DNA from: Salpingoeca rosetta
Lineage: Eukaryota > Protista > Choanoflagellata
Direction: 5' to 3'
DNA length: 64,000 bases
NCBI GenBank assembly: GCA_033442325.1
Contig: JAWQFM010000006.1
Coordinates: 377,628-441,627, forward strand
Positions 40,082-45,229 of this stretch are shown in pieces (within the stretch, counting starts at the first letter, position 1; every line of letters starts with the position of its first letter). Position numbers and translations under genes: made by a program. Under the pieces are notes generated by a model. The model did no database searches and was not told the DNA's origin. It saw only the letters and a program-made list of their open reading frames with translations.

Positions 40082-40222
40082 CCTTCGTTTGCACCGTCAC
40101 ACACTCATCTCAGCTCGCGCACACATACATACACACGCACACACACACAAACTTACTCGCAGACACACAAACACAAACACACTCAGCGCAGACACAGACA
40201 CATCCACACAAACGCAACAAAG

Positions 40223-42438
40223 ATGGGACAGGACTTGTCGCAGCTGCACGAAGTGGGCGCCATGCGCCAGGTTCTCGAGCGGTGCTCGTGGGAACAACGC
40301 TTCAAGCTGCTTTCGCTGAACAGGTCTTACCACGCACTCACGTTTGAGCAGGAAACGTGGCAAATCTTCTGCCACCTTCTGGAGACACAAGACTTTGTTC
40401 ACGTGCAGCGCAGGAAGGACGAGGACTGGCGCGACGCCTTCTTCCGACACCTTCCACTGCGCAAGCGGTGGCACGGCACAGCATCCCGCACTACGACGCC
40501 GGCCGACGAAGAGCGCCAGCGGCAACAAGACGAGGAGGCGGCAGCTCCACGCAACGCAGTTGATACAGACGTGCTTGGCGGCACGGGGATCGACAACGGC
40601 AGGGAGGAGAACACACCGGACCCAGCCGCCAGCCACTTCACCATCAACGTGTGCGCGCGGTTCCGCCCACTGCCCAAGCACGTGGACGCGGCTGTGGCAC
40701 GCGCGGCAACGAATGGGGATGGCGACACTGATGACGACGACGGCACTGACGCCGCGGCCGAAGAGGATGTGCATGGGGAGCGCGCAACACATGCTGTCGT
40801 GCCGCTGCACCAGCGCATCCGCATGATCCAGGCGCACTACGGCTGCTCCACCTCGGAGGCGCGCAAGCTGCTGTGGGCCGGCAAGGGTGACGTTAGCGCA
40901 TGGGACCCGTGGACAGATGCGCAGGCGCGCGCCCCGGCCCGCCGGCTTCCGCTCTCCGACATCAACGGCGACAGCAGCAGGAAGGAGCGAGCGAAATCCA
41001 AGTCGCAAGCACCAACAGCACAACAAGAGCAAGCCCCTGCGGTGGAGCAACGTGAAGGGCACAACGGCAAGGATGATGGCACTGATGGTGCACACAACAC
41101 CAGCGATTCGGCCGCTTGCACGTCGACAACCACCACAACGACTACGACCACGGCTACAACACCGGCGGCGTCATCGTCCTCGTCATCATCAACAAGTGCA
41201 GCGGACACTGCCACCACCACGGATGCAGCTGCCACTGATACGAGTGAGCCCAAGGCCCACGCGCTGCCAACAAGTGTGCGCACGGGGGTGCTCGCCATCC
41301 GACCCGACACGAACGACCTGGTGCTTTGCGCTGCTGGCGGCCTGCGGCACTTTGAGTTTGACAGCGTGCTCCCGGACACGTTCAACCAAGATGACCTGTA
41401 CGACCGGGCCGCGCGCTTGCAAGTCGGCCAGTTTCTCAATGGCGTCAACGCGTGTGTGCTCTGTTACGGCCAGACAGGCTCTGGAAAGACATACTCCATG
41501 TTTGGGCCGGACGACGTGACCAGCACAAAGCTGTCGCGTTTGTCGTCGCAGGCTGGCATTGCTCCACGTGCCATCACCGAGGTGGCCAACACGGTCATGA
41601 AGCGGCGCGAGCACGGCCTTGAGGTCTCCCTCAAGCTCACGTGCGTGGAGATTTTTGGCCAGGACATTACAGATCTGTTGCATGAGCGCTCTGTTGTCGG
41701 CGCGTGGCACGGTGTTGCTGCCCGCGCTGTGCTCAACAACGAGGCCGCAGAAGGTGTGTGGACGTACGTGTGTGTTTGCGTGTGTGTTTGTGCATGTTTG
41801 TGTGAGTTTGCGTGTTTACGTGTGTGTGTGTGTGTTGTGTGTAAAGTGCGTGTGTGTTTGTGCATGTTTGTGTGAGTTTGCGTGTTTACGTGTGTGTGTG
41901 TGAATCGTTTGAATGTGTGTGCATATGTGTGAATGGGTGAGATGTGAATGTGTGTTTGTGCGCACGTGCAATGTCATCGGCACAATAAGTCAATGGCGTT
42001 TCCGTGTTATCATTTGCATTTGTGCATGTGACCGCGGTGCGCAGCATCATCACAAGTGCACACGTTGACATGCGTTGCTCACATTGTGCTCACCATGATG
42101 GCCATTACCACCACCTCCACCTCCACCATCACCATCACCATCACCATCATCACTGCAATCACGCCCGACAGAGATTGTCGACCCGTATGAACTTGACGAG
42201 CTGCTTCTGCGTGCGGAGCGATCAAAGCGGCGAGCGGCAACGGCGATGAACGAGCGAAGCTCGCGTGCACACACTGTGTTCCTCCTCTCGCTTGACCAGC
42301 GCAACCCGCGCACGCACACGCGCCTCCAGAGTACGCTTTGTCTCGCTGATCTTGGTGGCTCCGAACAGCTGAAAAAGTCCAAGGTAGATGCCGGGTGCTG
42401 AGTATGCTGGGAGCGTGTGTGTGTGTGTGCGTGCGTGC

Positions 42439-42531
<93 letters not shown>

Positions 42532-43129
42532 GTTTGTCTGCCTGTACTGAAGCGTTGATNNNNNNNNNNNNNNNNNNNNNNNNNNNNNNNNNNNNNNNNN
42601 NNNNNNNNNNNNNNNNNNNNNNNNNNNNNNNNNNNNNNNNNNNNNNNNNNNNNNNNNNNACAGCTTCCCACGCTGTCTATCGCATAAATTCACTGCACAC
42701 ACACGCACGCATACACACACACGCATACACACGCATACACACACGCACACATACACACACACACACACACGCATACACACACACATTAGGCTGAGGGCGA
42801 GCGCAAGCAAGAGGCTGCAAAGATCAACCTTGGACTGCTTGCGCTGAAGCGATGCATTGGCGCGCTTCAGTCCAACGATCCGAGCCACGTTCCGTTTGGT
42901 GACTCCACCCTGACCATGCTGCTGCGCCCAGCCCTCAGTGGCAACTCGTTCACCACCGTCGTCGTCACGGGCAGCATGGAGTCTCGCCACGTATTCGAAA
43001 CGATGCAGGTTCGATGAGAATGCAACACTGCCAATGACCATTGCCGTGTGCGTTTACGCACATGCGCGCGTGTGTATGTGCCATTGGCCAACGATGTGCA
43101 TCTGCATTTGTGTGCATCATGCACACATG

Positions 43130-43174
<45 letters not shown>

Positions 43175-43488
43175 ACACACACGTACGCCCAGCTTCAGTG
43201 AACGTGCTTACACCCACCACTTGTGCCTCACGCGATCACCAACCCCTCCCTGCCTCCCTCCAGACAATGCGGTTTGGCGAGGCGTGCCAGGCTGTGACGG
43301 GTTCCGAGGTGACGGCGAACGTCAACGCAGCAACACAGGCAATCGATGCAATCAACAAGGAAATCACAGACTTGGAACAGGTGCGCGTGTGTGCGTGTAT
43401 TGTGAAGTCTTGTGTTTTCAATTTGTCCCACCATCTTCTTCATTGCTGTCATCAGATCAAAGCTATCTTCGCCCATCAACTCACTCAC

Positions 43489-43553
<65 letters not shown>

Positions 43554-43717
43554 CACAGCGCATCCGAAGTGAGGAGCGGTGGGTGAACAAGACGACTGTG
43601 CGAAAGGACCAGGAGGGCGAGGAGACAGTGGTGACGTCCGTGCTCGTGGGCGCAGAGGAGCTCCGTGAGCGATATGAACAGCTGTTGGAGACGCGTCGTG
43701 AACTGCTCGGTATCTGA
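40223..43717 (+). CDS. Orphan kinesin with an N-terminal F-box-like domain and a large insertion in the motor domain
   Basis: Motor motifs CARFRP, YGQTGSGKTYSM, NERSSRAH, LADLGGSE and HVPFGDSTLTMLL. N-terminus LSQLHEVGAMRQVLERCSWEQRFKLLSLNRSYHALTFEQETWQIFC. Short C-terminal coil. Five exons; one intron contains an assembly gap. Confidence 0.85.
42560..42659. other. Assembly gap (N run) inside a kinesin intron
   Basis: Run of n. Confidence 1.
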
Positions 43718-43839
43718 TCAGCGCAGCGTTTGCGCTCTTTGGTGTTGATTTACACGTGCACGTGCACGCTTGCATGGACAGAGAAGCACATGAGCAGGCA
43801 CCTCCTCGGCCTTGTGCGTGGGGTGGTCTGCGCTGCTGT

Positions 43840-43885
43840 GTTGTTGTTGTTGTTGTTGTTGTGGTTGTTTAAGTTGTTGTTTAAG

Positions 43886-43940
<55 letters not shown>

Positions 43941-44033
43941 AGTTGTTGTTAAGTTGTTGTTGTTTAAGTTGTTGTTAAGTTGTTGTTGTTTAAGTTGTTG
44001 TTAAGTTGTTGTTGTTTAAGTTGTTGTTGTTGT
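43840..44033 (+). repeat. (TTG)n microsatellite with regular TTAAG interruptions
   Basis: Directly visible between the convergent kinesin and LTO1 genes. Confidence 0.95.
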
Positions 44034-44185
44034 TTTATGTTCGTTACAGTTGATTAAATTCAAGTGCAATCATCACGCGAAGGAAACAGCCCCACCGGCT
44101 GCAACAGAGATGTGGCACACGTTTTATGTTCGTTACAGTTGATTAAATTCAAGTGCAATCATCACGCGAAGGAAACAGCCCCACC
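44032..44185 (+). repeat. About 65-bp direct repeat x2 (period 89 bp) in the LTO1 3' region
   Basis: gttttatgttcgttacagttgattaaattcaagtgcaatcatcacgcgaaggaaacagccccacc occurs at 44032 and 44121. Confidence 0.95.
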
Positions 44186-44188
44186 TGT

Positions 44189-45229
<1,041 letters not shown>

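What the first reader, a model, noticed from the sequence alone, without database searches (positions are those of the whole stretch)
40223..40475. F-box-like domain fused to a kinesin motor: a possible motorised SCF ubiquitin-ligase adaptor
Seen: within a single exon, LSQLHEVGAMRQVLERCSWEQRFKLLSLNRSYHALTFEQETWQIFC...DWRDAF precedes an intact motor domain. The pattern (L..L....L..IL..L....l..l..V.R.W..l......W...C, later W+..F) is that of an F-box plus its linker. I know no standard kinesin family with this architecture. Inference: it could carry SKP1-CUL1 along microtubules or ubiquitylate microtubule-bound targets.
Basis: partly seen in the sequence, partly recalled or inferred. Interest (0 to 1): 0.75.

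Follow-up and report, generated by a model that had tools for sequence, protein, structure and literature searches.

The report
F-box domain on a kinesin motor
A choanoflagellate kinesin motor, like most of its relatives across many protist groups, starts with a divergent F-box (the module that docks SKP1 in SCF ubiquitin ligases), so it may bring ubiquitin-ligase parts to microtubules; this design has only ever been recorded as one cell of a 2010 supplementary table.

Summary
The window is Salpingoeca rosetta. The gene at 40223-43717 (+) has five exons, encodes PTSG_00960 (745 aa) and is transcribed and spliced. Residues 1-87 score nothing in Pfam on their own. The same module heads 97 of the 120 closest kinesins, which come from choanoflagellates, Euglena, cryptophytes, haptophytes, stramenopiles and chlorarachniophytes.

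Evidence that the module is an F-box:
- A profile of the family module matches only F-box proteins in the PDB (42 of 42, best E 5e-8).
- It aligns to S. rosetta's own canonical F-boxes at 96% hhalign probability.
- It folds like the F-box plus linker of Cdc4 and FBXO31.
- It is modelled on SKP1's F-box-binding helices (ipSAE 0.70, best control 0.01).

Caveat: the S. rosetta copy has lost the LPxE motif, and SKP1 binding is predicted, not shown.

New family traits seen here are an N-terminal myristoylation signal in about a third of members, a conserved LPLHQR module inserted in the motor, and loss of the loop-12 arginine. The orthologue in Monosiga was listed as "F-BOX-KISc", clade X12, in a supplementary table of Wickstead et al. 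2010, and I found no discussion or study of it. The scan's own notes held no earlier finding on this gene.

The parts
40223..43717 (+). Whole coding region of the kinesin gene PTSG_00960 (745 aa). Exons are 40223-41753, 42172-42383, 42790-43008, 43264-43380 and 43559-43717, with the TGA stop at 43715-43717.
   Evidence: Each exon's translation is found in order in P0001 (with boundaries re-read on the sequence). The intron 1 junction is seen in 126, 80 and 140 RNA reads, and the exon 2 to exon 3 junction appears as loose ends.
40223..40243 (+). N-terminal MGQDLSQ, which matches the PROSITE N-myristoylation pattern G-{EDRKHPFYW}-x(2)-[STAGCN]-{P}.
   Evidence: 30 of 86 family members with a complete N-terminus start with MG. 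27 of 83 fit the pattern. Modification itself is inferred, not shown.
40235..40375 (+). F-box core, residues 5-51. H9-E10 stand in place of the canonical L-P, and G12 in place of E.
   Evidence: hhalign of A1 against A3 aligns residues 5-51 to canonical F-boxes, probability 96.4%. SKP1 contacts in the model fall at residues 4-37.
40223..40483 (+). Complete N-terminal module, residues 1-87: F-box plus helical linker ending in W..F.....R..W.
   Evidence: Family alignment A1. AF2 with A1 gives pLDDT 84 and five helices. VIA-align gives Z 6.4 to Cdc4 residues 270-368 and 6.2 to FBXO31.
40484..40633 (+). Variable, acidic, low-complexity linker, residues 88-137, between the F-box module and the motor.
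   Evidence: It is not conserved. The distance from the end of the F-box module to the RxRP motif of strand beta1 is 11-20 residues in several relatives (for example P0015 and P0003) and 63 in this protein.
40634..40672 (+). Motor strand beta1 (HFTINVCARFRPL), residues 138-150.
   Evidence: Read from the sequence. The RxRP motif is at residue 146.
40787..40951 (+). Conserved module inside the motor insertion, residues 189-243: VVPLHQRIRMIQAHYGCSTSEARKLLW...DPW.
   Evidence: Present in 97 of 120 relatives. P and Q are invariant; L, H, R, A and L are at least 90% conserved. No relative in Pfam or the PDB.
40952..41287 (+). Variable Ser/Thr/Ala-rich remainder of the motor insertion, residues 244-355.
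   Evidence: It is low-complexity and does not align to the Monosiga orthologue.
41468..41491 (+). P-loop GQTGSGKT, residues 416-423.
42249..42272 (+). Switch I NERSSRAH, residues 537-544. The family form is N.RSSRAH.
42348..42365 (+). Switch II DLGGSE, residues 570-575. This family form is found in 105 of 120 relatives.
43294..43714 (+). Neck and short C-terminal tail, residues 665-745, in exons 4-5. It is probably a coiled-coil dimerisation segment.
   Evidence: Sub-threshold match to the Pfam KIF9 tail domain PF23735 (E 0.058). The tail is colinear and highly similar in the Monosiga orthologue. The coiled coil is inferred.
42560..42659 (.). Assembly gap of 100 N inside intron 2.

Best explanation
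The gene encodes an F-box kinesin. A divergent but genuine F-box with its helical linker (residues 1-87), probably N-myristoylated, sits directly upstream of an N-type kinesin motor. The motor keeps all its ATPase motifs and is followed only by a short tail that I infer to be a coiled coil.

Proposed mechanism: the F-box docks SKP1 through SKP1's C-terminal helices. The probably dimeric motor then takes the place that a WD40 or LRR domain has in ordinary F-box proteins. This would bring SKP1, and through it probably CUL1-RBX1, onto microtubules. There the ligase would act on microtubule-bound proteins, on tubulin, or on the motor itself.

Shown here: the gene model and its expression; homology of the module to F-boxes at the family level; the fold; conservation of the architecture across distant protists; presence of SKP1 and cullin genes in the genome.

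Predicted only: SKP1 binding. Inferred: cullin recruitment, ubiquitylation, myristoylation, motility and dimerisation.

The stated confidence is for the core claim, a genuine F-box that binds SKP1. Homology alone I put near 0.9, and an active SCF ligase near 0.3.
For: Gene and expression:
- P0001 is identical to the exon-wise translations.
- Sense-strand RNA covers the F-box region and the intron 1 junction.

Homology to F-boxes:
- 97 of 120 relatives carry the module.
- 29 of 84 hit PF12937, 17 hit PF00646 and 4 hit PF18511, with no other family recurring.
- The A1 profile matched 42 distinct PDB sequences and all 42 are F-box proteins: FBXW 5.4e-8, FBXO3 4e-6, GID2 1e-5, FBXW7 1.7e-4, beta-TrCP 6.5e-4, Skp2 4.5e-3.
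- hhalign of A1 against 12 canonical S. rosetta F-boxes gives 96.4%, E 1.1e-9.
- In the organism's own genome, A1 finds only the kinesin (1.2e-20) and three loci that are also Pfam F-box-like hits.

Fold:
- The AF2 model has pLDDT 84.
- The 12 best VIA-align rows are all F-box proteins, Z 6.4-4.2, aligned on F-box plus linker.
- ESM Atlas structural neighbours are mostly F-box clusters.

SKP1:
- The complex model gives ipSAE 0.70, 0.72 and 0.64, against a best control of 0.01. Partner pLDDT is at least 75 and the runs share at least 71% of contacts. On the tool's calibration, 51 of 78 solved complexes and 2 of 108 mismatched pairs reached the mark.
- The interface is SKP1 residues 101-168 with kinesin residues 4-37 and 74-78.
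- SKP1 and cullin genes are present in the genome.

Constraint and motor:
- The module is 62% identical to the closest relative P0002.
- The ATPase motifs are kept.
Against: - The S. rosetta sequence alone reaches no Pfam F-box model even at E 10. A six-frame genome scan with PF12937 misses it.
- It has H-E in place of L-P and G in place of the E of LPxE. The proline is kept in only 46 of 84 family members. From general knowledge, changing LP often abolishes SKP1 binding.
- An exhaustive phmmer search with the single sequence found only family members.
- Foldseek E-values are all above 0.2, and Z 6.4 is within the range the tool calls common for helical models.
- The complex score may reflect memory of solved SKP1-F-box complexes. 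The SKP1 used (P0129) is from a relative, because the S. rosetta gene is cut by an assembly gap. The part in the interface is identical at 76 of 77 residues.
- The motor lacks the loop-12 arginine family-wide, so microtubule binding may be atypical.
- There is no experimental evidence for any activity.
Confidence: 0.6

Rival explanations
1. Relic F-box. The module descends from an F-box, but in S. rosetta and other members without the proline it no longer binds SKP1. It would then serve as a helical N-terminal cap that regulates the motor (it sits where the cover strand is in kinesin-1), mediates dimerisation or binds membrane together with the myristoyl group.
For: LPxE is lost in S. rosetta and the proline is missing in 38 of 84 members. 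There is no single-sequence Pfam hit. In several relatives only 11-20 residues separate the end of the module from the RxRP motif of beta1. The strongest family-wide conservation lies in the linker part (W..C, W..F, R..W) rather than in helix 1.
Against: The hydrophobic core positions of all three F-box helices are kept. The SKP1 complex model is confident with clean controls and a canonical interface. The module is 62% identical to the nearest relative.
Confidence: 0.25
2. SKP1 partner outside an SCF ligase. The F-box binds SKP1 but no cullin. SKP1 would then be an adaptor or regulatory subunit of a membrane-anchored motor, as with yeast Rcy1, Ctf13 or the RAVE complex (examples from general knowledge).
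For: It rests on the same SKP1 evidence as the main reading. A myristoylation signal in about a third of members suggests the N-terminus is the cargo or membrane end, while the tail is very short. No substrate-binding domain of the usual kind is present.
Against: Nothing here separates it from the SCF reading. Most F-box proteins do assemble with CUL1, and cullin genes are present.
Confidence: 0.2
3. Chance resemblance. The N-terminus is a lineage-specific helical extension unrelated to F-boxes.
For: There are no single-sequence Pfam or phmmer hits to F-box proteins. Foldseek E-values are weak.
Against: Three profile-level tests all point only to F-boxes. The reciprocal genome search returns only canonical F-box genes.
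Confidence: 0.03
4. Wrong start. The true protein begins downstream, so the F-box-like stretch is 5' UTR.
For: The transcript's 5' end could not be mapped, because reads were skipped in the repeat at 40100-40217. An in-frame M14 exists.
Against: RNA covers 40218 onward. 40223 is the first start codon of the open frame. Orthologues from independent transcriptomes begin at the same place with MGxxxS and carry the same module.
Confidence: 0.03

Closest known systems
Kinesin clade X12 of Wickstead, Gull and Richards 2010 (PMC2867816, Additional file 3): Monbr_38064 (Pfam architecture F-BOX-KISc) and Auran_53621
   Same: P0013 (MONBRDRAFT_38064) is a colinear orthologue, with the same F-box linker, the LPLHQR insert, the motor and the tail. 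It is the only published record of an F-box on this kinesin that I found.
   Different: The paper gives a table cell only and its main text never mentions an F-box. Only one of the listed X12 members was seen to carry the domain. Its presence in most members, the SKP1 model, the myristoylation signal and the insert were not described.
Canonical F-box proteins with a helical linker (yeast Cdc4, FBXW7, beta-TrCP, FBXO3, FBXO31, mouse FBXW12/19/21)
   Same: The F-box is followed by a W..C / W..F helical linker. These are the best profile and fold matches, and the modelled SKP1 interface is canonical.
   Different: The domain downstream is a kinesin motor rather than WD40, LRR or another substrate receptor. 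LPxE is lost in this copy. No D-domain was seen; dimerisation would have to come from the C-terminal tail, which I infer to be a coiled coil.
Kinesin-1 heavy chain motor domain
   Same: It is the closest solved motor by sequence (1goj, E 1.7e-45). The motor is followed by its neck and coiled coil, and the P-loop and both switch motifs are kept.
   Different: There is a 137-aa N-terminal extension and an insertion of about 200 aa after beta1. The family has its own forms SSRAH and DLGGSE, no loop-12 arginine, no long stalk and no kinesin-1 tail.
Batrachochytrium BDEG_00161, listed as FBOX-WD40-KISc-Nuclease (Kinesin-4/10) in the same 2010 table
   Same: It is another record of an F-box and a kinesin motor in one predicted protein.
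   Different: It belongs to a different kinesin family and includes a WD40 propeller. It is a 2007-aa single-genome model that may be a fused gene prediction, and it was not examined here.

Membership tests
F-box domain (Pfam PF00646 / PF12937) | Significant match of the protein itself to an F-box profile | tested here: not met
   P0001, P0001:1-95 and the window ORF give no F-box hit at E up to 10. The genome-wide PF12937 scan lists 28 loci but not this one.
F-box domain (Pfam PF00646 / PF12937) | Homology to F-boxes shown through the protein's own family (profile level) | tested here: met
   29 of 84 members hit PF12937. All 42 PDB hits of the A1 profile are F-box proteins, best E 5.4e-8. 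hhalign against S. rosetta F-boxes gives 96.4%, E 1.1e-9.
F-box domain (Pfam PF00646 / PF12937) | Three-helix F-box fold | tested here: met
   The AF2 model has pLDDT 84. The top 12 VIA-align rows are all F-box proteins, Z 6.4-4.2, rmsd 3.5-5.7 A over 78-84 residues. Z below 8 is modest for a helical domain.
F-box domain (Pfam PF00646 / PF12937) | LPxE motif at the start of helix 1 | tested here: not met
   The S. rosetta copy has H9-E10-V11-G12 at these positions. The proline is kept in 46 of 84 family members.
F-box domain (Pfam PF00646 / PF12937) | Binding to SKP1 | not testable with these tools
   Prediction only: ipSAE 0.70 against a best control of 0.01 (51 of 78 solved complexes and 2 of 108 mismatched pairs reached the mark), with a canonical interface. 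It may reflect memory of solved complexes.
SCF substrate receptor | Assembly with CUL1-RBX1 and ubiquitylation of a bound substrate | not testable with these tools
   SKP1 and cullin genes exist in the genome. No further test was possible.
Kinesin superfamily | Motor domain with P-loop, switch I and switch II | tested here: met
   PF00225 E 5.7e-73. The motifs are GQTGSGKT, NERSSRAH and DLGGSE.
Kinesin clade X12 (Wickstead et al. 2010) | Orthology to Monbr_38064 | tested here: met
   P0013 is the Monosiga hit in the relatives list (E 1.1e-99). It is colinear with P0001 and shares the insert and tail, and it is listed as X12. No phylogeny was built here.
Kinesin-9 (KIF9/KIF6) | KIF9 tail domain PF23735 above the Pfam cut-off | tested here: not met
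   E 0.058, 14 bits against a cut-off of 31.9.
N-myristoylated proteins | N-terminal M-G-{EDRKHPFYW}-x-x-[STAGCN]-{P} | tested here: met
   MGQDLSQ fits the pattern, as do 27 of 83 family members. The modification itself was not tested.

The most novel reading that the evidence does not exclude
An old, widely spread protist kinesin family is a self-propelled, membrane-anchored SCF ubiquitin ligase. The myristoylated F-box end would hold SKP1-CUL1-RBX1 while the motor walks on or holds to microtubules, so that ubiquitylation is delivered to defined microtubule sites such as flagellar, cortical or spindle arrays. The conserved LPLHQR insert would serve as a substrate-binding or regulatory site.
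Probability: 0.25. Interest if true: 0.8.

Novelty: new variant of a known kind. Interest (0 to 1): 0.62.

Why it matters
Motors and ubiquitin ligases are normally separate machines, and known links run the other way, with SCF ligases degrading kinesins. A kinesin that is itself the F-box subunit would give a direct way to place ubiquitylation along microtubules, or to couple a motor's lifetime to SCF.

The family is found in at least six major protist lineages, but no animal, fungal or plant member was named among the closest 120 relatives. It therefore also bears on what the early eukaryotic cytoskeleton contained and what animals may have lost.

S. rosetta can be transfected and edited (general knowledge), so the hypothesis can be tested in a close relative of animals.

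Tried and rejected
- Pfam on the single sequence, whole or cut, gave no F-box even at E 10.
- An exhaustive phmmer search of residues 1-100 against 1.84 billion representatives found only 7 hits, all family members or fragments, and no canonical F-box.
- The word-index search of the N-terminus found only the protein itself.
- AF2 without an alignment gave a poor model, pLDDT 50, and was not used.
- Foldseek against the PDB placed F-box proteins on top, but every E-value was above 0.2, so it counts only as consistent.
- I suspected the conserved insert (LPLHQR...S..EAR..L) was a UBA- or CUE-like domain. It has no Pfam family recurring among 96 members, no PDB hit at E 10 and mixed Atlas neighbours, so I dropped the idea.
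- A Kinesin-9 assignment from the KIF9 tail hit is below threshold.
- Literature searches for F-box kinesins, for kinesin-17 with F-box, and for the two locus tags found no paper. The exception is the 2010 supplementary table.
- The transcript's 5' end could not be mapped, because the reads tool skipped the repeat at 40100-40217.
The full-length protein used throughout is the database record P0001, which I checked exon by exon against the window.

Full report
**What is there**

The window is part of Salpingoeca rosetta, contig C6. The gene has five exons: 40223-41753, 42172-42383, 42790-43008, 43264-43380 and 43559-43717. It encodes the database protein PTSG_00960 (P0001, 745 aa).

I checked each exon's translation against P0001 separately (with boundaries re-read).

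Three stranded RNA-seq runs cover exon 1 on the sense strand. Depth is 23-230x over the F-box region and up to 480x further on. The intron 1 junction (41753|42172, GT..AG) is seen in 126, 80 and 140 reads, and the exon 2 to exon 3 junction appears as loose ends. The 5' end could not be mapped because of the repeat at 40100-40217.

**Layout of the protein**

- Residues 1-87 form a helical module.
- Residues 88-137 form a variable acidic linker.
- Strand beta1 of a kinesin motor follows (HFTINVCARFRPL).
- An insertion of about 200 aa comes next.
- The rest of the motor follows (Pfam Kinesin, E 5.7e-73).
- A short tail ends the protein.
- The P-loop, switch I and switch II are present.

**Is the N-terminus an F-box?**

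On its own it fails the tests:
- There is no Pfam hit even at E 10.
- A six-frame PF12937 scan of the genome does not find it.
- An exhaustive phmmer search returns only relatives.

The module is, however, a hallmark of a whole kinesin family. Of the 120 closest kinesins, 97 carry it. Where the source names an organism, these are Monosiga, Euglena, Cryptomonas, Amorphochlora, Cylindrotheca, Calcidiscus, Triparma, Ochromonas and Rhizochromulina.

I aligned 84 complete copies (A1) and ran these tests:
1. Scanned one by one, 29 members hit F-box-like, 17 hit F-box and 4 hit F-box_5. No other Pfam family recurs.
2. The A1 profile matched 42 distinct PDB sequences at E up to 10, and all 42 are F-box proteins. 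The best are mouse FBXW proteins at 5.4e-8, FBXO3 at 4e-6, GID2 at 1e-5, FBXW7 at 1.7e-4, beta-TrCP at 6.5e-4 and Skp2 at 4.5e-3.
3. hhalign of A1 against an alignment of 12 canonical F-boxes taken from S. rosetta's own genome (A3) gives probability 96.4% and E 1.1e-9 over residues 5-51.
4. Searched back against the S. rosetta genome, A1 finds the kinesin (1.2e-20) and three other loci. Those three are among the Pfam F-box-like hits.

**Fold**

- With A1 as its alignment, AlphaFold2 gives a confident five-helix model (pLDDT 84, pTM 0.71).
- Foldseek E-values are weak, all above 0.2, but F-box proteins lead the list.
- In VIA-align's second look at Foldseek's 69 candidate chains, the twelve best rows are all F-box proteins aligned on F-box plus linker: Cdc4 Z 6.4, FBXO31 6.2, FBXO3 5.3, beta-TrCP 4.4.
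- The tool warns that Z below 8 is common for helical models, so this is supporting evidence only.
- The ESM Atlas's own model of residues 1-100 also has mostly F-box clusters as structural neighbours.

**SKP1**

S. rosetta has one SKP1 locus, but an assembly gap cuts it, so the annotated protein is a 108-aa C-terminal piece. I therefore used the full-length SKP1 of a close relative (P0129). Its last 77 residues, which hold the whole predicted interface, differ from the S. rosetta protein at one position.

- The complex test scored 0.70, 0.72 and 0.64, against a best control of 0.01.
- Partner pLDDT was at least 75, and the runs shared at least 71% of their contacts.
- On the tool's calibration, 51 of 78 solved complexes and 2 of 108 mismatched pairs reach the mark.
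- The interface is SKP1 residues 101-168 against kinesin residues 4-37 and 74-78, which is the canonical arrangement.
- Many SKP1-F-box complexes are solved, so the pass may partly be memory. It shows likeness, not that this copy binds.
- Cullin genes are present in the genome.

**Caveats for this copy**

- In the hhalign register, the canonical L-P-x-E is H9-E10-V11-G12 in S. rosetta.
- The proline is kept in 46 of 84 family members and is missing in S. rosetta and its two nearest relatives.
- The hydrophobic positions of the three helices are kept.
- The module is 62% identical to the nearest relative, against 76% for motor plus tail. This suggests selective constraint on the module.

**Other family traits found here**

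- **Myristoylation signal.** 30 of 86 members with a complete N-terminus start with MG, and 27 of 83 fit the PROSITE N-myristoylation pattern. S. rosetta's MGQDLSQ is one of them. This also supports 40223 as the true start.
- **Insert module.** The motor insertion contains a conserved module of about 45 aa, VVLPLHQRLxLI...S..EA...L. P and Q are invariant. It has no relatives in Pfam or the PDB, and my UBA-like idea for it found no support.
- **Motor motifs.** Switch I is N.RSSRAH and switch II is DLGGSE throughout the family. The arginine of the loop-12 motif PYRDSKLT is absent in all 106 members in which the motif could be located. From general knowledge that arginine contributes to microtubule binding in kinesin-1, so motility needs testing.
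- **Attachment to the motor.** In several relatives only 11-20 residues separate the end of the module from the RxRP motif of beta1. The module is therefore attached close to where kinesin-1 has its cover strand.

**What it most likely does**

I take it to be an F-box kinesin. The F-box docks SKP1, and the probably dimeric motor stands where other F-box proteins have their substrate-binding domain. That would bring SCF components to microtubules, or put the motor's own stability under SCF control.

My estimates:
- Homology to F-boxes: about 0.9.
- SKP1 binding by this copy: about 0.6.
- An active SCF ligase: about 0.3.

The rivals are a relic F-box that now serves as a regulatory or membrane-binding cap (0.25), a SKP1 partnership without cullin (0.2, which overlaps the main reading), chance resemblance (0.03) and a wrong start codon (0.03).

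**Comparison with what is known**

Wickstead, Gull and Richards 2010 (PMC2867816) list the Monosiga orthologue Monbr_38064 in Additional file 3 under the unnamed clade X12, with Pfam architecture F-BOX-KISc. Aureococcus 53621 is in the same clade without the domain. The main text never mentions an F-box.

P0013 is that Monosiga protein. It is colinear with P0001, although its gene model lacks the P-loop segment. Six literature searches found no paper that describes or studies an F-box kinesin. The closest solved motor is kinesin-1 (E 1.7e-45), but the protein has neither its stalk nor its tail. A KIF9 tail hit is below threshold.

**Verdict**

The architecture was recorded once, in a table, for the sister species. 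New here are:
- its presence in most of the closest 120 relatives, across distant protists;
- the SKP1 model;
- the myristoylation signal;
- the conserved insert;
- the motor peculiarities.

I rate it a new variant of a known kind, of good interest, with clear experiments available in a tractable organism.

Noticed in passing
window 40787-40951 (P0001 residues 189-243): A module of about 45 aa, VVLPLHQRLxLI...S..EA...L, sits inside the motor just after strand beta1. It is more strictly conserved than the F-box (P and Q invariant across 96 sequences) and has no relative in Pfam or the PDB. Its function is unknown.
   Followed up: partly
window 42900-42930 region (HVPFGDSTLT, exon 3) and relatives P0002-P0120: The loop-12 arginine of the kinesin motif PYRDSKLT is absent in all 106 family members in which the motif was located (mostly Q, H, A or G). 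S. rosetta also has T for the lysine. Switch I is SSRAH and switch II is DLGGSE family-wide.
   Followed up: partly
window 40986: All RNA reads of three runs and a DNA-like contig read G where the assembly has A (301 of 301, 299 of 301 and 315 of 315 sense reads). The site is the second base of codon 255, in the variable insert. It is an assembly error or a strain difference rather than editing.
   Followed up: no
L001 (G000:C3:241559-244684), about 911-1012: The only SKP1 gene of the assembly is interrupted by an assembly gap. The annotated protein (P0125, named 'fimbriata-associated protein') is therefore a 108-aa C-terminal fragment that lacks the BTB half.
   Followed up: partly
window 42560-42659: A 100-N assembly gap lies inside intron 2 of the kinesin gene, flanked by long (GT)n and (CA)n runs. 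RNA loose ends bridge exon 2 to exon 3, so no coding sequence seems to be lost.
   Followed up: partly
window 43830-44200: Downstream of the stop codon there is a long (GTT)n array interspersed with AAGTTGTTGTT units. It is followed by two copies of a unit of about 85 bases (ttatgttcgttacagttgattaaattcaagtgcaatcatcacgcgaaggaaacagccccacc...).
   Followed up: no
P0013 (Monosiga brevicollis MONBRDRAFT_38064): The public gene model of the Monosiga orthologue lacks the P-loop segment (no G.TG.GKT). A stretch of about 60 aa fails to align where S. rosetta has residues 400-460. This is probably a missed exon in the annotation.
   Followed up: no
window 40947-41100: Low-level antisense reads (up to 29x against 320-440x sense) lie over the variable part of the insert in all three RNA runs.
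   Followed up: no
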